A stretch of DNA of 64,000 nt from Octopus bimaculoides (taxonomy: Eukaryota): assembly GCF_001194135.2 (NCBI RefSeq), contig NC_068984.1:67664056-67728055 (forward strand), given 5' to 3'. The translations under genes were made by a program, and so were the position numbers. Positions 12,346-54,880 of the stretch are shown here, one piece after another. Below the pieces are notes generated by a model that saw only the letters and a program-made list of their open reading frames with translations, was not told where the DNA came from and did no database searches. Positions within the stretch are counted from its first letter, which is position 1; every line of letters starts with the position of its first letter.

Positions 12346-12380
12346 GCTTACCTGAAATAGAATTTGTGAAAATATAAATC
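12346..12380 (-). other. Candidate recursive splice site (3' splice site immediately followed by 5' splice site); junction 12352/12351
   Basis: Minus strand ...TTTATATTTTCACAAATTCTATTTCAG|GTAAGC; about 28 nt AG-free upstream. Confidence 0.45.
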
Positions 12381-13411
12381 TCACGAATTTTACGCTTTTC
12401 TAGAGACCACCCTGTTTATATGTATATATACTAATGACTGTAGGGTATTATTTTGAAAGAGATGGGTGCTACTTCTAGCAGGTTGAGATAACATCTGCAG
12501 ATTTCCCTCGGTCTGTTTACAATCAATTTTATTAGCTGGAATCTATTCATAATATCAATCCAAAAGTAGAAGAAATGTGGGTAAACCTATCTCCGTAGCT
12601 AAGTATAATTGAAAATGAAATATATGTTTAGATACATGCAAGGTTTAATGCCAGATATTTCCTTACAATACAAAAACGATCGATTGGAAATGCAAAATTA
12701 GCGAAAAAATAATTGAGTTTAAAATTTAAGTATAAACAAGCGTGAAGTTCGTACAATTTTGAAATATTGTATGTGTAAACATTAATGCGAGTTTATTTAT
12801 TAACCATTTTCATCATAACATGATAATTCAGAAAGGATTATGGCAAAATCTAAATATCCGGTATTGCGTTTTTCCATTTTAGTAAATTGCCATGGTTTTG
12901 AAAAGATAGCCAAACATAAAATCCCTACTATGCGGAGATTAAACAACCAGAAATTAAATTATTCACTCTGAATGCATTTTATTGATGAATATCATTGCTA
13001 TTTGAGAAGCGATACTTGTGTTTTCTTTTTGAATTCTGCTGTTTTCTCAAAGGAGCGGTTTTAATTGAAAAGCATCAGCAGCCTGCTGTTAGATTTGCGA
13101 TCTAACAATGACAAGAGGTGCATTAGTGCCAAGTGAATAACCAATACACATGATAAATGACTAATAATGAACATATCCCCCACCTCAATGTTCCTTTAAA
13201 AAATGCCATTTATAGCAGTATGAATATAAAACAAAAACTATATAAGCTCATGACAGTTCATTCACATCATTAACATTAAAAAATAAAGTTTTAAAATATC
13301 TTTTAAAATTTAATTTCATCTGTTGTCATTTAGTAATTTACATACTTGAGTGCTGGAAGCCGTTCTTTTACGAAACACAATGGAGGTATTTGTTCAATAA
13401 TAAAGAGTCGT

Positions 13412-13616
13412 AGGCGGCGAGCTGGCAGGATCCTTAGCACAGCAGGAAAAATGTTTAGTCCATCCTTACGTTTGGAGTTTAAACTCTATCGAGGTCGACT
13501 TTGCCTTTCATCCCCTCGGATTCGATAAAAAAGTACCTGTTGAGCACTGGGATCGATATTATCGACTTAACTTCTCCCCCGACATTGCTGACCTTGTGTC
13601 AAAATTAGAAATTAAT
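13412..13616 (+). mobile_element. tRNA-derived SINE family B (CORE-like central domain)
   Basis: GGCGGCGAGCTGGCAG head, GTCGACTTTGCCTTTCATCC core, CCTTGTGTCAAAATTAGAAA tail; many homologues in the window. Confidence 0.9.
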
Positions 13617-13669
13617 GGAAGATAGACGTATATTGATGATGATAATGACGATCCTTTCTACAATAGGCA

Positions 13670-13866
13670 CAAAGCCTGAAATTCTGAGGGAGGGTTATAA
13701 TCGATTACGTCGAGTCCAGTAAATAACTGGAACTTATCTTATTAACCCAGAAAGGATGAACGGCAAACTCAACCTCGGCAGAATTTGAACTCAGAACGTA
13801 CAGACGGACGAAATACCGCGGAGCATTTTGCCCGGCGTGCAAACGATTCTGTCAGTTCGTCACCTT
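13670..13866 (-). mobile_element. SINE family B, tail-to-tail with 13412-13616
   Basis: Reverse complement reads AAGGTGACGAACTGACAGAATCGTTTGCACGCCGGGCAAAATGC...GAGTTCAAATTCTGCCGAGG. Confidence 0.9.
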
Positions 13867-13888
13867 AATAATGATAATAATAATAATA

Positions 13889-14103
13889 TAAAATATGGAC
13901 AAATACATAACAAAAAAAACAGGACTTACAAATATATATAACATACAGAAAATTGCACTACTGGGTACTGCACACGTTCTACGCAAAACACTTTCAATAC
14001 AGTAAACATAAGAGCACCACAGCAAACCACAGCACATACCGAAGGCGCCCAGAGCTGCGCTCGGTAGTGAAGTGAAAGCACGTTATAAAAATAAAACTAC
14101 TGA
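13889..14103 (+). mobile_element. 3' end of an R4/Dong-type (restriction-like endonuclease) non-LTR retrotransposon
   Basis: 13922-14005 encodes GLTNIYNIQKIALLGTAHVLRKTLSIQ*, matching the QK.ALLGTAHILRK C-terminus of R4-clade ORFs; flanked by (TAA)n on both sides. Confidence 0.75.
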
Positions 14104-17675: not shown

Positions 17676-17738
<63 letters not shown>

Positions 17739-18553: not shown

Positions 18554-19294
18554 GTAGGAGAATGAAAATGTTTTTTTACAAAGAAGTACAAAAAAGTACA
18601 AAATGAAGAAAATAATATATAAAACAATAATATATAAAAAAAAATAAATATACCCATACATTATATTGTCTTTGAGCTTTTGTAGTGCAATAGTAGTTCA
18701 TGTATAAATTGGTNNNNNNNNNNNNNNNNNNNNNNNNNNNNNNNNNNNNNNNNNNNNNNNNNNNNNNNNNNNNNNNNNNNNNNNNNNNNNNNNNNNNNNN
18801 NNNNNNNNNNNNNNNNNNNNNNNNNNNNNNNNNNNNNNNNNNNNNNNNNNNNNNNNNNNNNNNNNNNNNNNNNNNNNNNNNNNNNNNNNNNNNNNNNNNN
18901 NNNNNNNNNNNNNNNNNNNNNNNNNNNNNNNNNNNNNNNNNNNNNNNNNNNNNNNNNNNNNNNNNNNNNNNNNNNNNNNNNNNNNNNNNNNNNNNNNNNN
19001 NNNNNNNNNNNNNNNNNNNNNNNNNNNNNNNNNNNNNNNNNNNNNNNNNNNNNNNNNNNNNNNNNNNNNNNNNNNNNNNNNNNNNNNNNNNNNNNNNNNN
19101 NNNNNNNNNNNNNNNNNNNNNNNNNNNNNNNNNNNNNNNNNNNNNNNNNNNNNNNNNNNNNNNNNNNNNNNNNNNNNNNNNNNNNNNNNNNNNNNNNNNN
19201 NNNNNNNNNNNNNNNNNNNNNNNNNNNNNNNNNNNNNNNNNNNNNNNNNNNNNNNNNNNNNNNNNNNNNNNNNNNNNNNNNNNNNNNNNNNNNN

Positions 19295-19572
19295 GGGGGT
19301 GGAAGTGGTGTATGTAGTTTGGAATTGGTTAATAATGTTTTCAAAGATTTGTGTTGCGTTTTGCATTTAAGGACTTTGTGTGTATTAATGATATTGTTCA
19401 TTTTCGGGTCTATAGTAAGTAAGGGGAGGTTTTGTTTAATTGTGGTGAATGCTTCGATGTTATTGGGGTTATGGGTGGAGATGTATGGAAGTATTTTGGG
19501 GTTGGGTGTGTTATTATGTTGGTTGGTTTTTAGTGTGCTTTTGTCAAGTTCCTTGGCACGTTTTATTCCATA
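19295..19572 (-). mobile_element. Penelope-like element ORF fragment (region between RT and GIY-YIG endonuclease), open into the gap
   Basis: About 92 uninterrupted codons: YGIKRAKELDKSTL...KILPYISTHNPNNIEAFTTIKQNLPLLTIDPKMNNIINTHKVLKCKTQHKSLKTLLTNSKL, matching the PLE pattern P.V.T.NP....I......L..DP.....I........R...NLK.LL. Confidence 0.7.
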
Positions 19573-22500
19573 GGTCTATTTATAGTGATTTAACTTAAAA
19601 TTTTACTACCCAAACTATTACTCACTTCGGTATCACCCCACCCTTACATTTTATCTGCCTTTTCTCTACCCATCCCTTAATGCAACTCTGTCATATCACC
19701 CTACTCACATGTCTCACATTCTTTTACACCTTATCTTCTAATCTCTTCCTATTCCTCCCCCACACCTCTTCCATCCTCCCATCACATTATCTTGATCACC
19801 AACTAACACTCCCTGTCTCACTTCTTTCACCCTTTCTTCTCATATATATATATATATACAGAGAGAGACAGTGTGTGTATGCGAGAGAAAGAGAAAGAGA
19901 GAGTGAGAGAGAAAGGTACTATATTCTGTTTCTTCTTATACTCAACATAATACAGTTCTCCTTGTAAAACAATGTTTTGTAAATTTATATGATTGCCTGA
20001 GTTAAATGATAAATACATACCTAATTGGATATTTAAGCAATATGTTCAAAGATGACAAATAAGTTAGATGGGTGCTGATGAAGGAGAAAACCCACCAAGA
20101 TATTGCATATACGCCAATTACTTGTTTTTCATCTTCTTATTGTTTGTTTACATCTGACGTCTAGTATATGAAATATTGTAGCACAAATCAGTACTAGTTA
20201 TAATTTCTAAAGAATATCTATAGCGTTAACCTTAATAGATAATGAAGAAAGTGCACTGCTAACGCAGTAGAACCCGGTATTCGGTTATAAAAACGTTTAA
20301 AATACTTTATAGTATATTATGTCTGCATAACGAAATACCACGAACCTACAAATCATTAATACCTAATTGTAATAGTTCATTACAACTTTGTTTTCTGAAT
20401 CAGATATCACGGCGCTAGCGCTAGAATGGAAGCTTATTAACTATTATTCTAATGACAACCATTTTCGCCTCCAAAATATTTTCTTTAATTTTAAATTATT
20501 TTTCCAAGCGGGAAATATTTCTAAGAAAAAATTGTCTCTGCTTAAAGCAATTTTGTGTACATTACTAATCATGCATTCATTAGAAAAACCTGGTTTTTAT
20601 GAGAATTCAGCATTTTGCTAGAATAAATTGTCCTTTAAACTGTTGGAAACAACAGCTCATTCGTCAAATCACACCATACTGTCGTAAATAAGAATGACAA
20701 TAATAGAAACGTGAGGCAATATGATACATAAAAATAGACGGGACTGTCACAATCGCTGTGTATTGCTTGTAGACTTTTACCTGCTAAAGCTGACCTGAGG
20801 TCAAACGACAGGAGGAATAAAATTTATGCAGTGAACAATACCAAAAAAACAAGAGCTAGTTGCCTAATAACATATTCAATAATCTATTCTTGCTTCTACG
20901 GCAATGGTGTAGAGAAATCAAAATACGTTTCCGACAATCGATTTAAGTGATATCACTTTCGATTTATCATTTCTCAAAAAAAATTCTATTCCGTTTTTAT
21001 TCGTATCATAAAATTCACTTTGTCATCTGTATCATGTATTGGGTGTGATCAGAGACAGCATGAAATTGAAGCAATTACATCACGGAAGAGCCATCTTAAC
21101 CAATTTATGAATTTATTGCTTAAGCTGTCAAATTGTGTCGCATATTTGCAAACTGGTTATTTAGAGATTTCCACAGCACTGCTGAAAATATGAATTACTG
21201 CCAAACTTTAATTGGTCTTGCGGCCTTTCTTTAGTTTCTCTCTTTTCTTCTTACTAATACATAGTTCTAGCTGTAACATATGAGATAGATCACCGTTAGG
21301 CATATTAGATTCAATATTTCTGTTTGCCTGTAAATTCCATGTGTCTTTTCTATCATTTTCCTTGAAATTCCTCACCATTTTCTTTTATTTTTCATTTCGT
21401 TTTTCGCCCTTCCATATAAAGTATACATAGTAAGACCAAACATTCAACATCAAATACCATGATAAAAGAAGACAGAATGGAAAAGGTAAGAAGAGAGAGA
21501 GAATAAAACAAAACAAGGAAATGGAGATAAGAAGGAGTGTGACGAAACACGCAATCGTATAAGTATGCATATATATANNNNNNNNNNNNNNNNNNNNNNN
21601 NNNNNNNNNNNNNNNNNNNNNNNNNNNNNNNNNNNNNNNNNNNNNNNNNNNNNNNNNNNNNNNNNNNNNNNNNNNNNNNNNNNNNNNNNNNNNNNNNNNN
21701 NNNNNNNNNNNNNNNNNNNNNNNNNNNNNNNNNNNNNNNNNNNGATTATAACAAGTCCTGTTTGTGCACATATTTTATGATGTAGATAAACTGTAAACAA
21801 TAACGATTTCTTCATCATTCAATGTATCAATAAAAAGAGAAAAAAAAAAAGTAACGTGTTGAAGCGCCATATTTTCAACAAGATGATACCGATAAGGTGA
21901 ATTAGTGTATTGACTCATACTGTTGATCGATTTATGATTCAGTAACGCTGTTTAGTGTGTCAAGCCATTGAATCACAAGAATATGCACTGCGATTGTCTC
22001 TAAGATTAGACATATTAAATGTAGTTATAAACAGAGGGATTAATATTCTTTTTTCAACTAACAGTGAAATATGATAAATCATGACACTTCTTCAACAAAC
22101 TCTTTAAAAGAATCCAATCACAATGATGAATAAGGAGTGTCCCGATTGATATTTTCACTATGGTATATTAGTGAAGGACAATATTCATGACAACCGTTTG
22201 ATGTTACAGATGGAACGCAGTAGCTGTGAAGCAGGTAAAATAGTGAGAACTTGATCTTTTTCAAGCAGAATTCGAAAGTTTGTGTCAGTGCTGGCGGAAT
22301 TGCATAGATTTGTGGATAGAGACTACATTAAGTTGTAGCTTTGTTTAGAAAAGCAATTACTCTACCAATATGAGTAACTTAAAGACCTATGTGAGCTAAT
22401 AGAAATTTTCAATTCTTTCTCTTTAACTCTCATATATTTTTTGAAACAATCCCTAAGCTATAATTTTTCTATATATGTCAATCTACAGACACACAAAGTA

Positions 22501-22637
22501 AACATCGATTCCCAACATTTGCGGAAGTTCTGAAAGACTTTTGATGACTAATCCCAATTACCTACTTAATATATACTTAATATATTATGCTGGAAAATTT
22601 TAGCAACCCCTAGCATCAACAACTGTAAAAGAAAAAA

Positions 22638-22868
22638 AAAGTTACACCGTGTGTACACTAATTGCGCCTATTCTGTCTATTCAATCCTCTTTTTTTCCAT
22701 TATGTGTCCTATATTTTTTTTAATATGAAATTTGTTAGTCGTTCGATTGAGAGGGAACTTTCTCATCAACCTAAACAAATATTTTAACTTTTGTAGCAAT
22801 TGAAATTCAATTTTTTAAAAGCGATACTCTAACAACCATAAAATACTTCTGTCAGCGAAGAGATAAAC
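22638..22868 (+). repeat. Direct repeat copy 1 (about 230 bp; copy 2 at 24942-25172)
   Basis: Near-identical from AAAGTTACACCGTGTGTACACTAATTGCGCC to CTTCTGTCAGC.AAGAGATAAA; flanks are unrelated. Confidence 0.95.
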
Positions 22869-24941
22869 AATAATGTCTCCTAGTATATTACTAAAACTTG
22901 AAACCATAACTACTTGCAATAACACTAGAACATATGTGGAAAGAATTTACGTGTTTTTTCCCTCGTTTTCCTCCAACATACCATGTTTAACTCTTTTTAC
23001 AGTTAATTAACATTTGTTTGCTAAATCAAAACACATTCAAAAGTATGCTCATTGTTGGTCTTTGATAACCAAAGGATACTGTCACGCCCTATCATGCCAA
23101 TATAATCTACCGCCATTTAAAGTGAATACGTTACGTAAAATGCAAAGGAAGCTGTGCATGTCTTTAATCTTTTATATAATGAAGTTGGGAATCGTTGCAA
23201 AACTATAATTAATTACAGATTAGTTCCTGCTGATCTTTTGATTTTAATTAAAACTCTATAGTCAAAAAGTATAAAGGCTATCATACTTTTCTGTCATAAG
23301 CCCTTAACCGCGTTACAAGAAAGTGAAGATACTCAAAGTGAAACTTAAATGTTTGATTAATATTTTATGTATATCTGCATATTATTTAAATTTCTGTTCT
23401 TTTATGCACGTAGATATTTACAGGTTCCCACAATCTCTCTCTCGCTTTTTCTCTTTCCGTTTCTCTCTCTCACTCGCGCGTGCGCACACCTCAACGTACA
23501 AAACNNNNNNNNNNNNNNNNNNNNNNNNNNNNNNNNNNNNNNNNNNNNNNNNNNNNNNNNNNNNNNNNNNNNNNNNNNNNNNNNNTATGACACTAATATA
23601 AGAAAATTTATAGTTGTAACCTAAATTTACAACTAAGTAACACACGGTTTGTTATGATTAACTAAAAGCAATTGTACGATGTGATCCGGCATGGGTACAG
23701 TACTATATTGATGACGTAAAAGTGTCAAGGACTAAAAGAATACACTCTCTCTCTCTCACTCGCGCGTGCGCACACCTCAACGTACAAAACGTAAAAAAAA
23801 TTGTGCCTCTTAAATTGTTTTGCAACGCACAACTGCATTCAAACTAGTGAGCGTATTTTTAGTTAGGATAAAATCCTCATGAGACGTACACTCCAAAAAC
23901 ATTTTACTACGTAACCAGCTTTCATCTCTCGCTAACCAGTTAAAACATTACACATTTCAAGGAATATTTCTGGTAATAAACATTTGAAGGTTACTGAAAT
24001 TGTCTTTGTTTGAGAAAAAAAAGATCGCTTACTGCTCATCTTCATTATATTTTTCTTCTATATTAATGCTTTACATGCATATTTTAAAAAAATTACCATT
24101 GACTTAAATTTACTTGTGGTATAATATAATTTCTGAATACCAGTAATGAGATAAACCGACATAACGAAACGAAAAGTATGATATATGACGTTGTTGAACT
24201 AAATTAGACTTTCAAATTATGCTTTACATTTTAAAGTATTACAAATATAATGCAGCATACTAAACTAAATACGATTGAAAAGTGGCATTTTCCATGTGAT
24301 ACAAAAGTGGGAGACTGAAAACTATAGCATCTGAATGATATAAAATAAGTGTTTATACCAAATTCAAAAAAATTAAATACTCTAAAGCATTTTCATTTTT
24401 TTAGACTAATTTGATTTTTCAATCTCCACGCCTGTGGTGACGACAAGTTCTGTATAATTCAAGTACTCGAGTCAATTAACTCTATACTCCCAAACAAATA
24501 CGTTGCCTTGTCCTTAAGTGCGAAAACAATATTATTTTGAATGTCGGCTACAGTATTGCACTTCGAAAACTATTTCATCTTTAGAAATCTTTAATTTTCA
24601 AAGGATTATAATTCGATGAATGCTTTTCAGGTGATAATTTAAAGATAATTAGATATTTCTGCAATATATTATTTTTAAACCTACTAATTAAGTTTAAAAT
24701 GCAATGCTGTTTCAAAAACTGCATTTTCTAGAATATCACTTTTAAATAAAATCACACTTAATTTAAATATTTTCCACGTATTTTAATATTATTTTCGGTA
24801 TCCTATGTGATTTTTGGATTATTTAGACTTCCAAGTTATAATTACTTAAAACGCAGCAGTGAAACATTTTCAAATGTAAAAGATCAATCGTAGTTGATGA
24901 TAATGCCTTGATGATAGCTATTTTTAAGTATAATTAAAACT

Positions 24942-25172
24942 AAAGTTACACCGTGTGTACACTAATTGCGCCTATTCTGTCTATTCAATCCTCTTTTTTT
25001 CCATTATGTGTCCTATATTTTTTTTAATATGAAATTTGTTATTTGTTCGATTGAGAGAGAACTTTCTCATCAACCTAAACAAATATTTTAACTTTTGTAG
25101 CAATTGAAATTCAATTTTTTAAAAGCGATACTCTAACAACCATAAAATACTTCTGTCAGCCAAGAGATAAAA
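24942..25172 (+). repeat. Direct repeat copy 2
   Basis: See 22638-22868; only a handful of substitutions by eye. Confidence 0.95.
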
Positions 25173-28100
25173 CAATGCTTTAAGTGAAAAGAGTGATTAG
25201 TCTATTTATCCAGGTTTTCTTTTATTGTTTTAGTCTGGAGGAAACTGCTGTTAACATGACTTTCGTGCGTTCGATTATATTGAAGCTGTTGAAGAGTTTC
25301 AAATAGACAGCTGTAGGAGAACGTGTGCAGGGAGGTGATGCCAGAGGTTTTACTTCTTGCAAAGAAAGGATTTAGCGTAGAGATTATTACAGAAAATCGG
25401 TAGTGGCTGTAGTGGAAACAAAATCCATTTTAAGAATTTCTATATAATGATCGGAGAATAAAATACATACTGTATCCTGTTATCCTCTCTACTTCATACG
25501 TTGCAAGTACTGTCAAACTGGACAAAATAATTTACTAGCAAAACATTTCAAATAATCAGGAATTTCCATATTTTTTTTTTAAAGACAACCCCATCTTATT
25601 GTTATTGAAGACAATGCATACAGGCCATAAAGCTCTGAAACATCATTTTCTTTGAATCTGTGTATCGAAACTGAAAGAAACTAGACAGATAGTCAGATAA
25701 TGACTCAAATAGAATAGATCGTGCGATGTGGATTAAATAGACTACAGGAGACACATATCTCACCTTACGCGTAGACGTTTACGGATCAGTTATGTAATAT
25801 TGAATTATCACTTATCCTTATTTCACATATTACTATATACGAAGTTTCTAAAATAGGATGTAAAATATTAAACGTATCTTAAAATATACGAAGTATTTCT
25901 TCTTATGTATTTTTAGTTAAAATTAATTAATTTAAAATTCTTCAATAATTATGTTAATGTGTTTAATAGAAGATAAGGCAAGATTCGTGAGTAATCAAGG
26001 ATTTCATTGCACAAGATTCATACTTTGACAAGCGATAGATGTAGGAGAAGAGGAAATGGGATTGTGTAGCATATATATTTGGCTCTAGCTCACTAGAGTT
26101 AGTGACACATATCAAGGAAATGGCTGCACCAAATTATTGTCAAAGATTCGGTTCACTAGAAACTGACCAATAGCTCGAGACATTCCTAATATTATAATCA
26201 CATTATATTGATTGATTCAAGAATTTCATTTAGGGAAAAAGGAATATGTAATAGAAGTATGCAAATGAAAAGCTAACCTCATGACCCTGTTTTCATATCC
26301 GGTATATCTATTTCACTTAAGTGAATACCATCGAATGGAATAGCTTAATAGTTATGAAATCCTATTTCTATTGCAGTCTAGATATGGGCCCTTGTATCTA
26401 TACAATAACATATCAGATGTGTTGAGAGTCATTGAATAGAAATTATCTCTGGTATATTACGGGCTGTAAGATAGTTTCTCATCTAGATAGATAATTGATG
26501 TTCCTATTCACGCTTTCCACCAATGGAACAAAACAAATCTCATAAACTGCCAAGCTTTATCTAAGATTTTATATCATAATAAAAATGTGTCGATCAACGC
26601 TTACTGGAATGAAAGAAAAAATAGAAATGGATATAACTAAAACAAAAAAGACCAACCATATTTGGTAATTTATCACTCATCGTTAAAGATTCATATAGTG
26701 GAAGTAAACATTCTTGTTTAAAACTGTAATTTCATTAAAAAATCACTTGCATGTCTTTTTTGTATTAACACAAAGTGGATAAAAGGACGAAAGAACGAAG
26801 CATTTAATTGCTATAGGTGTTTCACATCCGAGATAGTTGATTTTTCTGAAACAATACATCAAAGTTGCATTACTGAAAGCCTTGAAAAAGATCCTAAAAT
26901 TATTCTTAGGAAAGCTAGAAAACTCTGAATTGCTACAAATGGAATATCTGGGCATATTAGTTTTTGCATTTGGCTAATAAATGAACAACATCTCAAAGAA
27001 TAGCATTTTTTAGTAGCAAAGAATGCAAGTAGGATGCAAGTATTTTTATAGCTATGACGCAAAATGTTTTCAACTGAAATTTATCGTATTTTACAACTGT
27101 TGACATGCGATATATCGATGCTAACAAAATATAAAAATGTGAGTACAGAATGCACGAAACGGAACGCGATGATTCTGCGGGGAATATGATTCGTTTTCAG
27201 TGATTAATCATTCCCTATAGACTATTCGTTTCCAAATAGGCATGATGTTTGCTTCCATATAGAACGATACGATAGTTTAGAAATGTATTGACCGAAACTG
27301 ACACGATATATTCCCATTAAATTGTATTGTATTGCGGTCAGACAAAAACATTTCTGAATGTATTTACAAATTGTGAACACACATACACACATATTTTATA
27401 TGTACAGAGTGTGTGTAAATATAATTATTCCTATGACTGAGTGCTCATTTTCTTCTGTACGTACACGCGAATGTATTCATTGAATAAAATTACAACTTTG
27501 AAGTATCACTTGCGAAAAATATCAATAAATATACATTCTATGATCTACGTAACGTATACAGAGATATTCTACAAGTGTTAACGCAAGAGAGCATACAGTA
27601 TTTACCGGTACAGATGTGTAATTATGGAATGCCATACGATATAATGGAGTGATATCGGTTTCAAATTATTATGGGTAGTTAAAATATTGAATGTAAAATG
27701 TATGATAAAATTCCGTGAAAATGAAAGAGCACACAAACACAATATTATACTTGTAATTCCGATAATCAGTATGAAAAGAACTCAACAAATGGAACTGGCA
27801 GGAAGGAAAAGGTGTANNNNNNNNNNNNNNNNNNNNNNNNNNNNNNNNNNNNNNNNNNNNNNNNNNNNNNNNNNNNNNNNNNNNNNNNNNNNNNNNNNNN
27901 NNNNNNNNNNNNNNNNNNNNNNNNNNNNNNNNNNNNNNNNNNNNNNNNNNNNNNNNNNNNNNNNNNNNNNNNNNNNNNNNNNNNNNNNNNNNNNNNNNNN
28001 NNNNNNNNNNNNNNNNNNNNNNNNNNNNNNNNNNNNNNNNNNNNNNNNNNNNNNNNNNNNNNNNNNNNNNNNNNNNNNNNNNNNNNNNNNNNNNNNNNNN

Positions 28101-28256
28101 NNNNNNNNNNNNNNNNNNNNNNNNNNNNNNNNNNNNNNNNNNNNNNNNNNNNNNNNNNNNNNNNNNNNNNNNNNNNNNNNNNNNNNNNNNNNNNNNNNNN
28201 NNNNNNNNNNNNNNNNNNNNNNNNNNNNNNNNNNNNNNNNNNNNNNNNNNNNNNNN

Positions 28257-28301
<45 letters not shown>

Positions 28302-28913
28302 TATATGCATACATATATACATACATATATATACATACATTCATACATACATACACATATAAACACAAGCTCACACATAGACACATACAAATGTATAAAT
28401 AAACCTGTAAAATTCTGCGTGTGTTTGTGTATGTGCAAGATCGTGAGAACGTGTTTAAAGCGAAAACATTGCGTTCTAAAGACCTATTACAACCATTTAG
28501 AAGCAAAATATATTGTTAATTCAAATTTTGATTTTTTTCTAGGGTTTCAAAACTTCTATAACACAAATGTGACCCTATTACCGATGTTGTCCACAGCACC
28601 CATGTGCAAATTAGTAAATGGTCAATTCTTAATGTTCAAGGCATATGAGTTTTTGTATTTATGTTTCTCAGTTCCGTCTCATGATTTCTTGGTTACGCTG
28701 TTATGTACAAAGTTACAACTTCGTAAATATCGTTCCTATAATTTAACTTTGAAATTTTAATCTCTTTCCTATTGTTTTCTTTTTCTCACCAGTACGTTTA
28801 ACTATTTTGCCAATGGTATGTTTAAAAAATATCTTTTAAATTCATACAGGCTCATACAGGCTCATACACACACACACACACACACTACGCGTGCGCATAC
28901 ACATATTTTTGAA

Positions 28914-29068
28914 AGATATCACTTAAACTGCATCTGGTAGCAGGGCTCTGGTTGGGGAGTTCTAGGATTTCGAGGAGTATGGAACCACCACATAGCCTAT
29001 ATTATCCCTAGGTCAACTCAGACCTAGCGTAGTAATAGTACCTATGAGGGTTCCAAATATGGGTTAAT
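28914..29068 (+). repeat. Degenerate dispersed repeat (octopus-type SINE-like tail)
   Basis: GATATCACTTAAACTGCATCTGG...CCCTAGGTCAACTCAGACC...GTACCTATGAGGGTTCC..ATATGGG resembles a repeat recalled from octopus sequence; single copy in this window. Confidence 0.4.
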
Positions 29069-30703: not shown

Positions 30704-30748
<45 letters not shown>

Positions 30749-32135: not shown

Positions 32136-32170
32136 GCTTACCTGAAATATATAAGAAAATAATTAAGCTC
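32136..32170 (-). other. Candidate recursive splice site; junction 32142/32141
   Basis: Minus strand ...GCTTAATTATTTTCTTATATATTTCAG|GTAAGC, with branch-like CTTAAT about 25 nt upstream. Confidence 0.5.
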
Positions 32171-33513: not shown

Positions 33514-33604
<91 letters not shown>

Positions 33605-33620: not shown

Positions 33621-34188
33621 TGTGTATCATTATAAACAAAGTTTAGAGGCGCTCGGTATGTTGGTATTTCACTGACAAGGAAGTAAATTTCGATTGCAGC
33701 ATAGTTGTCAAAACTGACAAGATTGGGTATTTACAATTAGAAAACAACAAAAAAGTTACCAGCAGGCGCCTGCGGTAAATCGGACACTGTATCTCTTGGA
33801 TTCTGACTGCGTATTCCGTACCATACCTGTAAGCAGTCCTTTACAACAATTACTGTCAATTTTACATAAATAAATACATATATACATACATACATAAACT
33901 ACAATTCAGAACTATAAACCACATGTTTTTATTAAAGTTATTTAGAAATTTAGCTCTGCATTCAAGTGGACTAAAGGGCACAATATATTTTACATGGGTA
34001 GTTTTTGTGTACTTTGAAATGTAAACGTTGTGTCTTTATCACATTACAACACCTGATTTTCCATTTTTCCCTAGCATATCAACACGTCAAAACTATAAAG
34101 TCATTAATACATTTTCTTTCCTTCCCAGATTGTTTCAGAAAATATTCGACTGAATCGTATTCACCGTGATCGAGATTACATTTCCTGT

Positions 34189-35155: not shown

Positions 35156-35460
35156 GTTCTGGCTTTGTATGCCTTTTTGAATTATATTAAATTTTTTTTT
35201 TCAATTAATTTGAATATTGGAATGCTTTCTGCTATTCAATTTCGTATCTGGAGATGAGTTTCATGAATTTGGGTAGTATAGTCCGCCAGAAAAAAAAATA
35301 CAGACAATGCTCTGGCTTTATAGTCGTGAAGAACAGCTTACATACATACATACCTACTAAAAGCGTTTTAAAATGCTTCGAAACAATACTCGATATTGTT
35401 TGTCAAATTCTGTTCAATAATATATGTATGTATGTGTTTGTGTGTGTATGTATGTATATA

Positions 35461-35505
<45 letters not shown>

Positions 35506-40598: not shown

Positions 40599-40660
40599 AC
40601 TTGCCTGAAATGAAGAAATAACAAGATATAAAAGAGTAAAATATTAAAAATATTATTTTG
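40599..40660 (-). other. Strong 3' splice site followed by GC-type donor consensus (candidate recursive site or exon start); junction 40605/40604
   Basis: Minus strand ...TTTTACTCTTTTATATCTTGTTATTTCTTCATTTCAG|GCAAGT; about 70 nt AG-free upstream. Confidence 0.4.
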
Positions 40661-42942: not shown

Positions 42943-43402
42943 TTCATACGTAAATACATACGTAAATACATACGTACATATAGATACATACAAGCATACA
43001 CACATATACATATATACATACATATACACACATAAACACATTTTTATATTCCTTTATTATATATGTGTTGAATCATGTTTGAATTTACGAATATACCATA
43101 AAAATATTTAAAACTCTTAAATTCCAATGCAAAAGCAAACTTTAATTTCATTTTCATAATTTAGAATGTTTTTTTACAGAAACATACAACGTTCTGTTAC
43201 TTTAATTTCAATGCAAACTTTAAAATCTTATATTTATTCTAAGCTTTAAGGGAATATTGCATTTAGCAACGCTAAGTGAAGCTCTAATTTTATTGCAAAC
43301 ATTTTACAAGATTATTCTCAGAATATTTCAAGATTATTTTCAGATATATTTCCCAGTAAACTATGAAAAGTATTTCTGATTTAGAAGATAAGATATATTA
43401 TA

Positions 43403-44593
43403 TTAGGTCGTCAAGTATGAAATTTGTAGTAAAGTATATGGTAAACTTTGACAGCTGCTCATTTCGCCCCGTTATGGTATTTTAACATTTTTATTTTTCG
43501 TTGGAAAGCTGACACATTTGTTTGTTTATTATAACTCATTTTGCGCTTTATACAATATTTATAAATCATTTTTTGGTATTTTTGTTTATAGATAGATAAG
43601 TCGGAAATTTATACAGAGTTAAAATATGAATTCTTTCTTGGAAATACAACATCGCAGGCAGCTCGGAATAAGAGTATCAAATTGGTTTGCAGAATTTCGT
43701 TCTGGTAACTTTGACCTCACAAATGAGCAGAACCAGAAACAAAAGTGGATATGACGAACTGAAAGCCACCATCGAATCAGATCCATTTCAAAGTGCCCGT
43801 GAATTATCGTTGTTCTTTGGTGTTAGCAAGCAAACAATATTGACTCACCTAGTTCAAATCGGTTAAGGGAAAAATTTGGATAAGTGGGTTCCTCATGAAC
43901 TCACTAAAAATCAGAAACAGTAACGTTTGGAAGCCTGCATTATGCTACTTTCTCGTCACAAAAAGTAATCATTTTTCAATCGAATTGTAACATGTGATGA
44001 GTAATGGATCCAGTACAACAACCGCAAACGTTCAGCACAATGGTTGAACAAAGACGAGCCACCAAAACAGTCCAGAAAGCAAAATTCAACAAAAGAAGCT
44101 GTGTGTGTTTGGTGGTCTGGCGCAGGTGTGATACATTATGATTTCATTAAACCTGGCTCATCAATCACGGCCGAAGTATACTGCAGCCAACTGGACAAAA
44201 TAACGCAGAAACGTACAAAAAAAAATCAGCCCAGATTAGTCAATAGATCCACTTCTATTTTATTGCAAGACAATGCCAGAAAACACATCGCAAAAATGGC
44301 ATTCGCGAAACTACAGGAGTTGGAGTTGGAAATTCTCCATCATCCACCATACTCATCTGATCTTGATAGGGAAAAAAATAATTCCCACGATGCTATAAAA
44401 CAAGCCTTCCAAGAATTTATTGACTCTAGATTGCCAGGCTTTTACGGTTCCGGGTTGGACAAGCTACCGCTAAATTGGCAAAAGTGTATTGACAAGATGG
44501 GTGCATACTTTGATGAATAAAACAACTCCTTGCATTCATAAAACATTAGCAAACTTCTTTTCTTTTCTACAAATTTCATACTTGACGGCCTAA
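43403..44593 (+). mobile_element. mariner DNA transposon, both ends intact
   Basis: 27-bp TIRs TTAGGTCGTCAAGTATGAAATTTGTAG (43403-43429) and CTACAAATTTCATACTTGACGGCCTAA (44567-44593) with one mismatch; TA on both sides. Confidence 0.95.
43592..44520 (+). pseudogene. mariner transposase pseudogene
   Basis: (ATA)DKSEI..LKYEF, WFAEFRSGNFDL, KWVPHEL, RIVTCDE*W, LLQDNA, HPPYSSDL, WQKCIDKMGAYFDE*; at least four in-frame TAA stops and a deletion after YSSDL. Confidence 0.93.
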
Positions 44594-45018
44594 TACCTTC
44601 ATTTCATTGTAAATATGGAAATAGAATTACAATGACTTTTGTGAAGAAGTTATTTCCCTTGCCCTAGTAAAGTACGATTTTCAACCTGTGTTAGAATCAG
44701 AATTGAAACGAGAATGAATTAGATTCCATAACTCTGCTAATGCTGACAATAAGTTCTTAGAATCCAGATATTGACATCCCGGCCTATATGAAGTTTTATA
44801 GATGGGGTATATGCATCATGATTGAATATCATATTTGAGTAACTAAAATGACTACTTGTCTTAAAACTGAATACAGAAATAGTTAAGCCTAGACAGTAAA
44901 CTGATAGATTGAAATACATACACGCATGCACATACACACTTACATTCATACGTACATACACATAAAAATACAATTGTGAATATGTTTGAAAATTCATACA
45001 TACATACATACAAACATC

Positions 45019-45447: not shown

Positions 45448-48400
45448 TCCGAAGGGTTGTGAGTACTGCCCTAACTTCTTTAACTAAGTTACAATATGGT
45501 GTTACTCGATAAGATACCACAAACCGCAGCAAAAATATTTTATAGCAAATAATATATGATATTAGTCAAATAATAAACTTTGTATAATTTTTGGATGTGT
45601 ACCATAACTAGCATAATCCTTTCTATTATTACCATAACTAACAATATAACTGCTTTAGTTTCAACTAGCATTCTCGAATCAAATCATTTCCTAAAGAACT
45701 ACTGCTCAGAATGAACACACACACATGCACACACGTACATACATGCAACAAACATATGTCTACACACACTCGCATAAATATATGTATGTACACACACACA
45801 CACACACACCCACACCCACACACACACACACACGCACACGCACATACACACAGAGGAAATGAGAAAAGTTCAAATCATGTAAACCACAATGAACACATGT
45901 GTCCGGATTTAATTAAGGTAAAAATTGTCCGAAATAAAGCATATATTGATATATCAAAAATATAAAAATATATGAATAGTACAGATATGTGGACATATAA
46001 ACATATGAATATATAAACATAGTAATAATATAATCAAATACAGGAATATAGATAAAAACATTTTTTTTTTAAATTTAAAATATAGCGAAGAGAAAATAAT
46101 AGGCATCAAAAACCCTATGGGTTTCAAATTTTGTTTCACAAATCATGTAATTATAAAATCGATTAAACACTACGGCACCTTATGTCGCAGGCTGACGAAC
46201 ATCTTTGCGTAGAATTTTGAACACGGAAAATATCGGGAAGTCCGTGTGTGTGAGTGAGTGCGGGCTTGCGTTAATGTAAAACTGTAAACTTATTGGTAGA
46301 ACAGCTTCCTTCCTTTTATGCCATATCGGTACGTAGAGATTCAATACGTTGAGATCAATAAAACAAACGCCAAAACGAAATTACTCGGCTCTACATAATC
46401 GATTAAAATGTAAGAGAACAGTTCCTCAATACGGCTACAGTCTAATAAAGTAGTGAGTAATAAGTAAAACAACTTATGCATTTGAACAAGGAAAACGTTT
46501 TGTACCGGTGAATACATACTTTTGCATTAGAAGGTTATACCAACATGATATATATCGAAGAGCCGTTAGAACAGCAGCGCCCATCTATATTCCCTTCAAG
46601 GATTATGACTGGAGGATTCAAGTAAATTTAAATATGAAAATAAGTGATTGTATCTATGTTGCATGCATGGTTCATTTAAACGTCAGTTAATCTTTATGGT
46701 AGGATTACACAAGTATATACTATCAAACGGATAATATAGGCTTAAACTCGATAAATATTACTGAAAACAATGTAGAGTATTGAATTTTATTGCACTATTA
46801 ATTGCACATATACCATAATTGTTTTATAACTCACATCCATTAGGACAGGTATAGATATTCCCTACAGCAGTTCGTCTTAATGGAAAAGATCAGTGAGGTC
46901 AGTATTCTGCTAAAGATAAATACAGTTGTTCAACTGAGTGTTAACCGAAAGTCAAGGTATAAACGTTTAGAGATATTTGTTCCGTTTTATGAAGGTGTAG
47001 TGAAACAACACTTTCCATTTCCACTTTTAGGTGAGTGCATTTTAAGCTTCTTTATTTATATAAAATAGCTTTGACCACCCAAATGCCTACGACATTAACT
47101 TGCTGTGTATGTATATTGATTTTTATATATGAAATACGAAACATCAAATGATATTTAGTAATATATATTTCATGACATTATTCATAAGTGCAAAAAGCCA
47201 CAGTAAATCAAATAAAGATCGAATGAGCCTCTTTTACCAATGACAATGGTGATAGCAAATAAAATGATCCTGGTTTGGCTTTAAATATATGTTTCAATAT
47301 TTTATGTGCAATTAGCTTTATCTAGTTTCCACCATGTTCTCAGTGGCTAACCCGATACATACTGACCCAGATGTTAAAGGGTACAATGAATGCATTATTA
47401 TAGATCTTTAATTGGTTTGATTTATTGTATCATTGCAATTTTAATTTCAAAACAGTGGCAAAACTGTCTGGTAAGAATAGGTTTCACGAGTTTAAAAGAC
47501 CTTCAAGTCCATTTTACCTTTCACCTTTCTGAAGTGAATAGAGTAAATAGCAACTGAAATAATTACTGGGGTTGGTGTAAGTTGCTGTACTCTCAAAACA
47601 GTCCCATTATAATTACTAAAATTACTAAAAGAATAAAGGTATATATATTTTTCGCATCACTTAATCAAATGTGTTGGGTTGAATATTGGTGAGAGTCTGA
47701 CATAAAAAAATATATATACATTTATCCTTATGCCTTTCGAATTTACGTGTTACCAAATAATTTTTTATTTTTTGTCTCTGTAGTTTTATCACTATACAAA
47801 TGCCCGTGAAAGAAGGTTTCTGTTCAGTTTTTATACCATTTATCTTAGTACAAAATTAGCATCAGTGCCTATGATCCTATTCTCACGTCTCATTAGTACC
47901 TTTAATATAGTTTGAAGACGAAGACAAAATAATTCAAGAGGATGTTGGGAACCATTATCTTATATAGCTTATAATTTTCAAAATAGCTCAAAACAAATAA
48001 TTTAGCAAAGACAACGTGTAGGTTCATTAGATAGAAACAGGTTAGCTTTATTAAAGAATGATATAGTCAAATATATCAACTCTAATATTGAAGCGGTACA
48101 TAATTTTATATGATGAAAAAAGCAAATTCAAAATTGAATTTAATGCGTAAAGAGACATAATTATTTCAAAACATTTTGCGCTTAACATTGAGTTTGTCAA
48201 GGCAGAAGTATCATAATGCTATACGATTTAGAACCTTTAATTTGATCACCTTTCTCATTTTATATCTCAAATTTGTACCCCTCTCCATTACTCTAGTACA
48301 ACTATTGATCAGTTGTCTAGTAGATTATGTATATTAATGAGATTCGTGGATATTCACTTTTTAAACTGTTCTTGTTTTTATCTTGATGCATACATTTATA

Positions 48401-51630: not shown

Positions 51631-52521
51631 CAGGGTGCAATGGGTAAATTATCATGAAGTTATATTTTTAATTTCGTGCAGGCACATTGTTTTTTATTTT
51701 GTCGGCTACACAGTATCATAGGGCAGTGTCTGTAAAAAAAAATAGCACCATGACGCAATTCCCATTGTCAGAAATTTGGAAACGATATACTGTACTGCTT
51801 GGCATTCGCACCGAAAGCTCCAGTATTAACATTTCAAAGTGGTTGGGTGTCAATGTGAGGACAGTGCAATCTGAGAACATGTATCGAGACTGAAAAATAT
51901 TAAACATCCAGTCAACATCATGGTGTTGGAGATGATCACTAGAGACGGTGACTTTATGCTTCCATTCATTTCCCCACACAGACTCAGGCTTAACACGGAG
52001 GCAAGTATCAATTGCCTGGAGGAGGTAGTACTGCTCTGGATCAAGAAAGTGACTGCTGGAAGATCCTGTGTCTGGCAACTGGATTCTGCACCATGCCACA
52101 CAAGCAGGAGAACCGAGCCATGGATGTCAGACAATTTCTGCGACCACATCTCTCCAGCTAATTCCCCAAAGTCTGACCAGCTAACTCCCCAGACTGCAAC
52201 ACCCTTGATTATTATGTGTGGGGCGCAGTTGAACGAGAGACCAAGAAAACTTCTTGCAACATCAAAGATGAACTGAAACCAAGAATTATGACAGCGTTCA
52301 CCAACTTAAACACAGAGACCGTCTCGATGAGTTGCAGGAGATTCCGAAGTCGTCTGGAGGCTATGGTTGAAGCCAATGGCGATTTTATTGAATAAATTTA
52401 CTCTTTAGTATTTCAAGATATGTTTATGTAATTTTGGTAAAATATATCTGTTAAAATGAGATGTCATTCTTATTTCCATGTTTGCACAATTTAGAGAACA
52501 GTATTTTTTTCGTACTCTCTA
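51631..52521 (+). mobile_element. DD37D (maT-type) non-autonomous deletion derivative
   Basis: TA|CAGGGTGCAATGGGTAAATT start; MTQFPLSEIWKRYTVLLGIR N-terminus; ITRDGDFMLPFI, WQLDSAPCH, NSPDCNTLDYYVWGAVE, FRSRLEAMVEANGDFIE*; colinear with 7001-7790. Confidence 0.9.
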
Positions 52522-52615
52522 GTTCATCCTGTTGCAAATCTAAAAATTCAATAACATATAGAAGGGTGATGGAGATTAAAAGTGGAAGAATAGCGGTTAA
52601 ACTGCTGCCTATTAT

Positions 52616-52699
52616 TTCTTCTTCTTCTTCTTCTTCTTCTTCTTCTTCTTCTTCTTCTTCTTCTTCTTCTTCTTCTTCTTCTTCTTCTTCTTCTTCTTC
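52616..52699 (+). repeat. (TTC)n trinucleotide microsatellite
   Basis: Pure run of about 28 units. Confidence 0.97.
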
Positions 52700-53079
52700 A
52701 CGTGGCCGTAGTTGAGTTACATTTTACTACGCCGAACCTTGCATGTCTGTCTTCCATTAGCCTTAGTGGATACTAAATTTTGAGATGCGTGTCTCTGGTA
52801 TTTAGGCACGGCCGTTTACTTCCTATATTCGAATCTTAAACTGAAAGTCAGTTGTGTTATTCACCCTTCAATGGTCGATAAAATGAAGAACCGAACAACG
52901 TACTTTGCGGTTTCAAGTTACGTCCCTTTAATTTTTTCTTCTCTTCAAATCCCTTCAGAATCAATGTTGCTGTTCGTTCTTGTGGGATCAATAAAATAAA
53001 TAATTGAGTTGATTCAATCGACTACAACTCTCCATGTGTGTGTTTTTTTTACCTTTGAAATAAATCGATATTATATTAT

Positions 53080-53290
53080 GGCGAAAGGAGGAAGGCTGGC
53101 ACAATCGTTAGAGCTAGGGAAAATTCATTGCAGTATTTTAATTATGACTGCTTAACACTCACTTCAAATCCCACCGTAGTCAACTTTGCATTTTAACGTT
53201 CCAAGGGTTATCAAATAGTCAAGTCTTGAGATCGATTTAATTAACAGCCCCCGTGCCGCAAAACTGGTGACCAGTTGTTCTTTTAGAAAA
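53080..53290 (+). mobile_element. SINE family B, highly degenerate
   Basis: GGCTGGCACAATCGTTAGAGC...TTCAAATCCCACCGTAGTCAACTTTGCATTT. Confidence 0.6.
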
Positions 53291-54829
53291 GAGCTTTACG
53301 AAAATATGGATGATCTACAACGTCATATTTGTCACTAAAATATCATATCTTTTCTCCTAGTCAAAATGCAGCTAGTACTGTATGCATAACGCATTCAACA
53401 CACAGACATACACACGCACGCACACACAGACACACACATATACACACACACGCACACACGAACACACAAATATATACAGAAATATTATAAGCATTTGTTT
53501 TTAAAATTACTAAAAATTTTAAACTTATTAATAACGACAAAGGAAATTTGAATTATAAAACACTGAAAACATTATTTCGCAATAAAATGACTCGCCGTTT
53601 CTTTATTTTTAGAAAGAAGTCGAGATGTTGTAAATCTGTTTTATGCACTGATTACCCACTAAGCTCTGGATAAATTTAGTAATTGTGATACACACTAAAA
53701 TACAGTAATTGTGTATGTTTCTATGTGATATAATTACGAAAGAAACAAACGGTCGAATGGAAATTCAAGAGTAACTCAACAGAACAATATCATTCAGTCG
53801 ATAATTACGCAGCTATTAAGATACATCTAAGAAACATTAATAACATTGTGAAACAGAATATATAATTTAGTGCGAAACATACAATTTTACATTTTAAACG
53901 AAATATCTGTTGTACATATATTGAGACATGTCACTGGTCCAGCCAATTTGTATAAAATTACAACTGTCTAAACTTTACTAATTGGATTCGCAGTTTCGTA
54001 GTTTAGACGCTGTGAACCTATTATCACTAGTCCAACAATAGACTCTTAGTATTATTGTCGTTCTTTACTGCCACTAAATAAACACAGTAATCATTACATA
54101 GATAAGAACAAAAATATAGAAGCTAATGTTAAATGTGATATATCATTGTGGTTCTGTTCCCCGCACCATTATTTTGTTAAACGTATGAAATAAGCTAATA
54201 ACGCAAAGATGTTCTATGTAATTCATAACTTGTTATTCTTATATCATAAGAACTGTTATCAGCTAATTTTGAAATGTAACTATACGAAACTAACAGCAGA
54301 TTTTGTTAAAAAATAAACACTATTTCCATTTGGAAAACGATGATTGTGTTCATTGATATAATCGTTGGAGATCTAAGTGAGAAATTCCAAGGCTTTTCTC
54401 CGCGCGAGTAATTAAATAATCTATAATATGTTAAATGATTAAAGAAATATTTTATTTATTAATATAATTAATATAATTAATTAATATAAAATGATTAAGG
54501 AAATTATCTGTTTATTAATATCTGCCGGAAAGTTGGTAGAGTTCACATAATCAATAATGTTTCTTTTCATAATGTAATAATTAAAAGTCCATGTATATGT
54601 ACTGAAGACACAGTCGATTACATCTCCTTGTTCATATTTTATCGACCTCCGGAGTGTGGAGGGCTAACTCGAATCCGATGATGTAGGGAGTAACTTAATG
54701 CGTCACTCCACTGCGTTGTTTATTGGCAATCTTTGTAGTATAGTAACTTTGTTTTCAGCTAAAGAGTGAGCTTTTACACGGTCAGTCGAAATGTAAGATA
54801 TCGTAGCCAAACCTCTATCTTCGGTTATA

Positions 54830-54880
54830 TCTCACCTGCTAAAGAATGTAGAAATTCGTTGTATAAAGTTAGAGTAAAAA
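54830..54880 (-). other. Candidate recursive splice site; junction 54836/54835
   Basis: Minus strand TTACTCTAACTTTATACAACGAATTTCTACATTCTTTAGCAG|GTGAGA, with a CTAAC branch motif and a tandem TAG/CAG acceptor. Confidence 0.4.

What the first reader, a model, noticed from the sequence alone, without database searches (positions are those of the whole stretch)
12346..54880. Series of co-oriented AG|GT junctions: candidate recursive-splicing (ratchet-point) system in a giant minus-strand intron
Seen: four minus-strand sites where a polypyrimidine acceptor is followed with no exon by a donor consensus: 54836/5 (CTTTAGCAG|GTGAGA), 40605/4 (TTCATTTCAG|GCAAGT), 32142/1 (TATTTCAG|GTAAGC) and 12352/1 (TATTTCAG|GTAAGC). 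Spacing is about 14, 8.5 and 20 kb. Two share an identical 14-mer with unrelated flanks, so they do not come from a shared repeat. No coding exon is evident in between. Known: this is the architecture of recursive splice sites in long Drosophila and vertebrate neuronal introns; I know of no description in cephalopods. My rough, post-hoc estimate for TTTCAGGTAAG at this base composition is about 0.02 expected copies per strand per 60 kb. Caveat: one comparable site lies on the plus strand (47030/1).
Basis: partly seen in the sequence, partly recalled or inferred. Interest (0 to 1): 0.72.

Follow-up and report, generated by a model that had tools for sequence, protein, structure and literature searches.

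The report
Recursive-splice-like motifs, function unproven
Four spots on one strand of this repeat-rich animal DNA, which has no detectable coding exon, look like a splice acceptor butted against a splice donor, but they are only slightly more numerous than chance predicts and nothing shows the region is an intron, so they are most likely coincidences.

Summary
Two share TATTTCAG|GTAAGC with unrelated flanks.

The case for a "system" is thin:
- **Site quality.** One site has a GC donor, not GT. Another has a second AG three bases upstream and lacks the TT at -5/-6 seen in 99.5% of fly ratchet points.
- **Strand.** The second-best site in the window is on the plus strand. A 4:1 strand split is not significant (p about 0.38).
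- **Excess over chance.** It is modest and depends on the threshold. Nominal p is 0.003-0.05, and all thresholds were chosen after seeing the sites.
- **Shared 14-mer.** This is ordinary here: 49 non-repeat 14-mers recur in the window.

I found no sign of a gene on either strand. Pfam matched only transposon families, the ORFs I searched have no homologues among 5.8 billion proteins, and there are no RNA genes and no consistent strand skew. The sites also sit on three scaffold contigs joined across gaps.

Intron status, RNA evidence, conservation and even the organism cannot be tested with these tools. My best reading is chance motifs (about 0.6). True recursive splicing remains possible (about 0.12).

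The parts
54830..54853 (-). Junction motif TTCTACATTCTTTAGCAG|GTGAGA (AG ends at 54836). It is a tandem TTTAG/CAG acceptor with A at -5. A CTAAC branch-point-like string has its A at -34.
   Evidence: (PWM 17.2)
40599..40622 (-). Junction motif GTTATTTCTTCATTTCAG|GCAAGT (AG ends at 40605). It has a good pyrimidine tract (16/20), but the donor is of the GC type.
   Evidence: (PWM 13.4)
32136..32159 (-). Junction motif TTTTCTTATATATTTCAG|GTAAGC (AG ends at 32142). This is the best-scoring site in the window. A weaker donor TAG|GTAAAT lies 50 nt downstream.
   Evidence: (PWM 19.0)
12346..12369 (-). Junction motif TCACAAATTCTATTTCAG|GTAAGC (AG ends at 12352). It shares its 14-mer with the 32142 site. 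The tract is interrupted by CACAAA, and no downstream donor scoring 4 or more lies at +20 to +250.
   Evidence: (PWM 14.8)
47013..47036 (+). Opposite-strand junction motif TTCCATTTCCACTTTTAG|GTGAGT. It is the second best in the window and serves as an internal control against a strand-specific system.
   Evidence: (PWM 17.8)
43401..44595 (+). Mariner-type transposon relic with inverted ends. It carries the additional minus-strand YAG|GTGAGT at 43849, showing that such strings also arrive inside transposons.
18714..36490 (.). Stretch holding six N gaps (18714-19294, 21578-21743, 23505-23585, 27817-28256, 30330-30673, 35506-36490). These separate the contigs that carry 12352, 32142 and 40605/54836. 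Four of the six abut AT/AC microsatellites; 18714-19294 and 23505-23585 do not.

Best explanation
The four junctions are most likely chance juxtapositions of an acceptor-like string (T-rich run plus CAG) and a donor-like string (GTRAG) in AT-rich (about 34% GC), transposon- and microsatellite-laden non-coding DNA. They are not a dedicated recursive-splicing system. T-rich runs ending in CAG are abundant (TTTCAG occurs 49 times on the minus strand), and about 2 YAGGTRAG per strand are expected. A reader hunting through 64 kb for the best examples then finds a handful. Shown: the strings, their scores, the modest excess, and the absence of any detectable gene. Inferred: that they have no function. 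If the region does turn out to be transcribed from the minus strand, the two consensus TTTCAG|GTAAGC sites would probably be seen by the spliceosome whether or not selection put them there.
For: - **Expected numbers.** About 2 YAGGTRAG per strand and 0.25 YYYYAGGTRAG per strand are expected by composition.
- **Strand.** The five best sites split 4:1 between strands, and the plus-strand site ranks second. That split is not significant.
- **Size of the excess.** It reaches only P 0.007-0.05 in Markov simulations, P 0.012 in a juxtaposition test, and vanishes at looser cut-offs.
- **Shared 14-mer.** Repeated 14-mers are common in the window, 49 in all.
- **Transposon origin.** One further YAG|GTGAGT sits inside a mariner relic.
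- **No gene signal.** Pfam on 413 ORFs gives only transposon families. ORFs next to the sites and the 60 longest non-TE ORFs have no homologue in 5.8 billion proteins. There is no Rfam family or tRNA. There is no consistent A/T or G/C skew, and no hexamer strand bias that survives multiple testing.
- **Atypical sites.** Two of the four are atypical: a GC donor, and a tandem AG with no TT at -5/-6.
- **Prior.** Octopus introns average about 5 kb (5.4 kb in O. minor, PMC6279123), so an exon-free intron longer than 42 kb is a rare setting.
Against: - Two exact copies of the near-consensus TTTCAG|GTAAG on one strand, against 0.02 expected, is nominally about 2e-4 for that one word.
- No dinucleotide shuffle out of 100 reached three YYYYAGGTRAG.
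- Only 0.3% of other acceptor-donor offsets reach the count seen at offset 0.
- Spacings of 8.5-20 kb fit fly recursive segments, whose means are 18 kb and 9 kb.
- Three of the four sites have TT at -5/-6, as fly ratchet points do.
- Three of the four have a weaker donor 23-54 nt downstream.
- The lack of exons also fits a giant intron.
Confidence: 0.6

Rival explanations
1. True recursive splice sites (ratchet points). The window lies inside a giant minus-strand intron that is removed in steps. The upstream exon is joined to each AG in turn, which regenerates a 5' splice site (GTGAGA, GCAAGT, GTAAGC, GTAAGC) used for the next step.
For: - Strong juxtaposed motifs at 32142 and 12352, with usable ones at 54836 and 40605.
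- A nominal excess on the minus strand.
- TT at -5/-6 in three of the four sites, which is the hallmark of 99.5% of fly ratchet points.
- Spacing within the range of fly recursive segments.
- A weaker downstream donor that could define a cryptic RS-exon at 32142 (+50), 40605 (+54) and 54836 (+23).
- No coding exon between the sites.
- In flies, most introns longer than 40 kb carry recursive sites.
Against: - There is no evidence that the region is transcribed, intronic, or on the minus strand.
- No exon was found anywhere in the 64 kb, so the intron would have to exceed the window.
- The strand split is not significant, and the second-best site is antisense.
- Pyrimidine tracts are ordinary (13-16 of 20), not the extra-strong tracts of fly ratchet points.
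- 12352 lacks an RS-exon donor.
- 54836 has an AG at -5/-4, which would favour a 3-nt offset.
- All thresholds were chosen after seeing the sites.
- Co-orientation depends on scaffolding across gaps.
- In vertebrates and lungfish, conserved recursive sites are few even in very long introns.
Confidence: 0.12
2. Ordinary splice sites of unannotated transcripts. One or more of the junctions would be the plain acceptor or donor of a non-coding, alternative, micro- or poison exon (an lncRNA or an unannotated isoform) whose neighbouring bases happen to resemble the other splice signal.
For: - Acceptor and donor scores are individually good.
- Candidate short open segments bounded by the sites exist, for example 40784-40605 ending at the GC donor and 32141-32096.
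- Draft annotations miss many non-coding exons (my own knowledge).
Against: - None of the flanking ORFs has any homologue or domain.
- The chance that a normal exon begins GTRAG or ends in a T-rich tract is itself low.
- No RNA data are available.
Confidence: 0.1
3. Repeat-borne motif. The TATTTCAGGTAAGC copies, or other sites, would be remnants of a dispersed repeat family too old or too short to be seen within this window.
For: - The window is dense in transposon relics and SINE-like copies.
- One YAG|GTGAGT lies in a mariner relic.
- A weak extended similarity exists upstream of the two 14-mers: TGAG.TT.A.TATTTTC.
Against: - The flank similarity is not significant (z=1.8).
- No site is covered by any intra-window repeat, even at E<=1e-3.
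- No Pfam or homologue signal lies nearby.
Confidence: 0.07

Closest known systems
Drosophila zero-nucleotide ratchet points (Ubx, kuz, luna; Burnette 2005, Duff 2015, Pai 2018, Joseph 2018/2021)
   Same: - Juxtaposed (Y)nNCAG|GTRAG.
- TT at -5/-6 in three of the four sites.
- Several sites in one orientation, 8-20 kb apart.
- A possible short cryptic exon with a weaker donor at three sites.
   Different: - Fly sites are defined by RNA evidence, location in the sense strand of introns longer than 11 kb, and ultraconservation. None of these is available here.
- Pyrimidine tracts here are ordinary.
- One donor is GC.
- One site has a tandem AG.
Vertebrate recursive sites with RS-exons (Sibley 2015; Blazquez 2018), in long neuronal genes
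   Same: An AG|GT junction followed by a potential RS-exon donor that is weaker than the regenerated donor. This holds for 32142, 40605 and 54836.
   Different: They are conserved and lie in identified long genes. No gene, expression or conservation is known for this window.
Stochastic or cryptic use of AG|GT strings in long introns (discussed for lungfish in bioRxiv 10.1101/2024.12.11.627982)
   Same: Strong but unselected AG|GT strings in long non-coding stretches could be used at a low level if they are transcribed.
   Different: This needs transcription of the minus strand, which is not shown. It implies no selected "system".
GC-AG introns (minor class of U2-type donors, consensus AG|GCAAGT; own knowledge)
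   Same: 40605/4 reads CAG|GCAAGT, the GC-donor consensus.
   Different: I know of no described ratchet point with a GC donor. At one mismatch from the word, the site is within chance (4 matches against 1.31 expected, reached by 4 of 100 shuffles).

Membership tests
Recursive splice sites / ratchet points | [quoted passage not shown] | tested here: met
   Met for 32142 and 12352 (TTTCAG|GTAAGC) and largely for 54836 (CAG|GTGAGA). Not met for 40605, which is AG|GC. The PWM ranks them 1, 4, 3 and 5 in the window.
Recursive splice sites / ratchet points | TT at -5/-6 and an unusually prominent pyrimidine tract (99.5% of fly sites) | tested here: inconclusive
   TT is present at 40605, 32142 and 12352 and absent at 54836, which has TA. 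Tracts are 13-16 pyrimidines of 20, no stronger than ordinary acceptors.
Recursive splice sites / ratchet points | Located on the sense strand of a long (over 10-40 kb) intron | not testable with these tools
   There is no annotation, and no exon was detected in the window on either strand. Exact look-ups of window ORFs found no record.
Recursive splice sites / ratchet points | Sense-strand excess over antisense | tested here: inconclusive
   The top five sites split 4:1, binomial p=0.375. YAGGTRAG splits 6:1. No independent strand signal exists.
Recursive splice sites / ratchet points | Downstream cryptic RS-exon (about 50 nt) ending in a weaker donor | tested here: inconclusive
   32142 has +50 TAG|GTAAAT. 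40605 has +54 GGG|GTACAT. 54836 has +23 GAG|GTTTGG. 12352 has none at +20 to +250. Such weak donors are frequent by chance.
Recursive splice sites / ratchet points | Segment lengths of a few kb to tens of kb | tested here: met
   The segments are 14.2, 8.5 and 19.8 kb. Fly segments range from 2.6 to 63.6 kb, with means of 18 kb and 9.1 kb. Gap lengths are only estimates.
Recursive splice sites / ratchet points | Evolutionary conservation of the AG|GT motif against diverged flanks | not testable with these tools
   No related genome is reachable. Searches with ORFs spanning or flanking the sites returned nothing.
Recursive splice sites / ratchet points | RNA evidence: exon-to-site junction reads, saw-tooth coverage, lariats | not testable with these tools

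The most novel reading that the evidence does not exclude
The window is part of a giant minus-strand intron, longer than 64 kb, of a cephalopod gene. The intron would be removed in four or five steps at ratchet points 54836, 40605 (a GC-type ratchet point), 32142 and 12352. As far as the paper library shows, this would be the first recursive splicing described in a lophotrochozoan.
Probability: 0.1. Interest if true: 0.55.

Novelty: not a real feature. Interest (0 to 1): 0.2.

Why it matters
If the sites were real, they would extend recursive splicing from flies and vertebrates to cephalopods. That would support an ancestral bilaterian origin and give a handle on how large, repeat-rich genomes with long neuronal genes process giant introns. 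A GC-donor ratchet point would also be a new variant.

As it stands, the finding mainly shows how easily consensus-like AG|GT strings turn up in 64 kb of AT-rich DNA. It also shows that motif inspection alone cannot establish recursive splicing.

Tried and rejected
- **Gene and strand.** I scanned for exons with splice-site PWMs plus an open frame, ran Pfam on all 413 ORFs of 42 aa or more, and ran two homology searches: ORFs around the sites, and the 60 longest non-TE ORFs. Only transposon relics turned up. Their accession numbers appear in no paper. The cephalopod origin is therefore unverified.\n- **RNA genes.** Rfam and tRNA scans found none.\n- **Strand asymmetry as a proxy for transcription.** The A>T skew on the plus strand comes from the 40-48 kb region only. 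TTTCAG at 49 against 25 (p=0.007) ranks eighth of 422 hexamer pairs, where about 3 are expected at that level. PAS and donor hexamers are symmetric. I rejected this as evidence.\n- **Shared repeat origin of the two 14-mers.** Rejected.\n- **GC-rich patches as hidden exons.** Most of them coincide with intra-window repeats or transposon relics; none showed an exon signal.\n- **Six-frame translation blocks.** The alignment tool refuses sequences with stop codons.\n- **Literature.** No paper in the library reports recursive splicing in cephalopods or molluscs.
Full report
**Observation.** Reading the minus strand confirms every string at the stated coordinates:
- ...TTCTTTAGCAG|GTGAGA (54836/5)
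- ...TTCATTTCAG|GCAAGT (40605/4)
- ...TATATTTCAG|GTAAGC (32142/1)
- ...TCTATTTCAG|GTAAGC (12352/1)

The 14-mer TATTTCAGGTAAGC occurs exactly twice, both times on the minus strand. The plus-strand site TTTTAG|GTGAGT at 47030/1 is also there. Spacings are 14.2, 8.5 and 19.8 kb, and the last two include N gaps of estimated length. The window has nine gaps. Most of them abut (AT)n or (AC)n microsatellites. The four sites lie on three different contigs (8989-18713, 30674-35505, 36491-57669). Their order, spacing and common orientation therefore rest on the scaffolding, which cannot be checked here.

They give about 2 YAGGTRAG per strand against 6 on minus and 1 on plus, and about 0.25 YYYYAGGTRAG per strand against 2 and 1.

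I built a generic 24-nt acceptor-plus-donor weight matrix from my own approximation of metazoan consensus frequencies. It ranks the sites as follows:

| Rank | Site | Score |
|---|---|---|
| 1 | 32142- | 19.0 |
| 2 | 47030+ | 17.8 |
| 3 | 54836- | 17.2 |
| 4 | 12352- | 14.8 |
| 5 | 40605- | 13.4 |

One of the two best is on the other strand. A 4:1 split has a two-sided binomial p of 0.375, so "co-oriented" carries no statistical weight.

Further tests give:
- **Simulated sequences:** sites scoring 14.8 or more are expected 0.3-0.65 times per strand against 3 observed on minus, P 0.007 (orders 1 and 3) to 0.05 (order 5).
- **Juxtaposition test on the real sequence:** 183 acceptor-like sites, of which 3 are followed by a strong donor against 0.47 expected, P=0.012.
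- **Offset control:** 3 at offset 0 against a mean of 0.25 at 377 other offsets, of which 0.3% reach 3. With looser cut-offs the enrichment disappears on both strands.
- **The tool's dinucleotide shuffles:** 3 YYYYAGGTRAG against 0.51, with 0 of 100 shuffles reaching 3. For TTTCAGGTAAG with up to one mismatch: 4 against 1.31, with 4 of 100 shuffles reaching 4.

All thresholds were set after seeing the sites. Sharing a 14-mer is not unusual in itself, because 49 non-repeat 14-mers recur in this window. The two copies do not come from a common repeat: no site is covered by a self-BLAST hit, and the 300-nt contexts align no better than shuffles (z=1.8). Taken together, there is a real but modest local excess of strong AG|GT strings, at a nominal p of roughly 0.003-0.05. 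A scan across many windows would produce that level by chance many times.

**Anatomy of the sites.**
- **TT at -5/-6.** Found in 99.5% of fly ratchet points. Present at 40605, 32142, 12352 and the plus-strand site. Absent at 54836.
- **54836.** It is a tandem TTTAG|CAG, so the upstream AG would compete and leave a 3-nt offset.
- **Pyrimidine content of -23..-4.** It is 13-16 of 20, ordinary rather than the extra-strong tract described for flies.
- **Branch-point-like strings.** Present upstream of all sites (CTAAC at -34 for 54836), but they are cheap in AT-rich DNA.
- **Downstream donor.** A weaker donor that could close a cryptic RS-exon, a requirement in the current model, exists at +50 (32142, GTAAAT), +54 (40605, GTACAT) and +23 (54836, GTTTGG). 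None lies at +20 to +250 after 12352.
- **40605.** It has the GC-donor consensus GCAAGT rather than GT.

**Surroundings.** The window is about 34% GC and full of microsatellites and transposon relics. The relics include:
- a mariner-type element at 43401-44595, with inverted ends and a Transposase_1 ORF
- mariner relics at 7058-7740 and 51741-52447
- a Tc3-HTH relic at 34108-34590
- a LINE reverse transcriptase with zf-RVT at 61434-62806
- two SINE-like families, a foldback inverted repeat and an LTR-like pair

One further minus-strand YAG|GTGAGT, at 43849, sits inside the mariner relic.

I looked for host exons in several ways:
- **Splice-bounded open segments:** none looked protein-like.
- **Pfam on all 413 stop-to-stop ORFs of 42 aa or more:** only transposon families above noise.
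- **Homology searches against 5.8 billion proteins:** 26 ORFs next to the sites and the 60 longest non-TE ORFs (65 aa or more) returned nothing.
- **RNA genes:** no Rfam family or tRNA.
- **GC-rich patches:** most coincide with intra-window repeats or transposon relics, and none showed an exon signal.

That fits a giant intron, but it fits intergenic DNA equally well.

**Strand of transcription.** There is no usable signal. A>T on the plus strand comes from 40-48 kb only. G/C skew is negligible once tandem repeats are masked. AATAAA and donor hexamers are symmetric. TTTCAG is 49 on minus against 25 on plus (p=0.007), but that ranks eighth of 422 hexamer pairs, where about three are expected at that level.

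**Origin and comparative evidence.** Exact look-ups of window ORFs found no record. The reverse-transcriptase relic matches only unnamed ENA and Logan contigs, at most 79% identical, and their accession numbers appear in no paper. No orthologous sequence is reachable, so conservation is untested.

**What is known.**
- **Flies, Duff et al.:** 197 ratchet points in 130 introns of 11-133 kb, one to six per intron, with segments of 2.6-64 kb (mean 18 kb). Motifs are highly conserved, and all sites are supported by junction reads and saw-tooth coverage.
- **Flies, nascent RNA:** recursive sites occur in most introns longer than 40 kb, with a mean segment of 9.1 kb. They are about twice as conserved as control AGGT sites.
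- **Mechanism:** it requires a cryptic RS-exon whose donor loses to the regenerated one.
- **Mammals:** Lungfish, with 40-Gb genomes, show no more than human-like levels.
- **Cephalopods and molluscs:** no paper in the library reports recursive splicing.
- **Octopus gene structure:** in O. minor the average intron is 5.4 kb and the mean gene is 23.6 kb. Annotated genes therefore cover a minor part of the genome, and exon-free introns longer than 42 kb must be rare.

**Weighing.** These are my rough estimates, not computed results.

| Quantity | Estimate |
|---|---|
| Prior that a random window lies wholly inside one giant minus-strand intron | 1-3% |
| P(three or more strong sense sites, given such an intron with fly-like usage) | about 0.1-0.3 |
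| P(this pattern on a given strand by chance) | about 0.01-0.05 |

That gives a posterior of roughly 5-20% for real recursive splicing, and I use 0.12. The most likely reading, at about 0.6, is chance motifs in non-coding DNA. Ordinary splice sites of unannotated transcripts (about 0.1) and an undetected repeat origin (about 0.07) remain possible.

**Verdict.**
- **Observation:** accurate but over-read.
- **Interpretation:** cannot be tested here and has a low posterior.
- **If true:** it would be a new member of a known kind, namely recursive splicing in a new phylum, perhaps with a GC-type site. It would not be a new mechanism.
- **What would settle it:** annotation mapping, total or nascent RNA-seq, a genome-wide sense-versus-antisense count, and cross-species alignment.

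Noticed in passing
window 43401-44595: Mariner-type DNA transposon relic of about 1.2 kb. It has 34-nt inverted ends (43401-43434 / 44562-44595, 94%), an HTH-like ORF at 43672-43863 and a Transposase_1 ORF at 44005-44517 on the plus strand. It contains a minus-strand YAG|GTGAGT at 43849.
   Followed up: partly
window 7058-7740 (-) and 51741-52447 (+): Two further relics of one transposon family, 80% identical over about 700 bp and in opposite orientation. The ORFs are frame-broken. Pfam does not recognise them, but they read like a DDE transposase.
   Followed up: partly
window 61434-62806 (+): LINE reverse-transcriptase relic (RVT_1 plus zf-RVT). GC content peaks at 58% (150-bp windows, 61392-62807) and CpG o/e is 1.07, well above the window background. 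It is cut by the gap at 62807-63025. The closest proteins are unnamed ENA and Logan contigs, at most 79% identical.
   Followed up: partly
window 10054-11405: Foldback-like structure. The arms 10054-10655 and 10735-11405 are inverted copies at 86-88% identity, separated by about 80 bp, with an (AT)n stretch inside the left arm.
   Followed up: no
window 22632-22871 and 24936-25176: A pair of 241-bp direct repeats, 97% identical and 2.3 kb apart, enclosing the gap at 23505-23585. This could be the LTR pair of a small retroelement or a recent segmental duplication.
   Followed up: no
window 13454-13849, 42317-42473, 48819-48989, 51000-51189, 58623-58682: SINE-like dispersed repeat family, 72-82% identical, whose copies give a recurring pseudo-ORF motif (..SEVDFAFHPxGVDK..). 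Two copies sit head to head at 13454-13606 and 13655-13849.
   Followed up: no
window 695-1053, 1456-1733, 18264-18444, 45020-45330, 57728-57961: A second short interspersed repeat family, 74-84% identical, associated with (AC)n/(TG)n tracts.
   Followed up: no
window 52616-52699: A perfectly pure (TTC)28 microsatellite (100% matches) next to the transposon relic. Most other microsatellites in the window are imperfect.
   Followed up: no
window 40514-40717 (-): The ORF running through the 40605 junction encodes a transmembrane-looking stretch (VILGIFTIIGVLLITLGYMIGICS). It has no homologue or Pfam match and is probably a by-product of AT-rich composition.
   Followed up: yes
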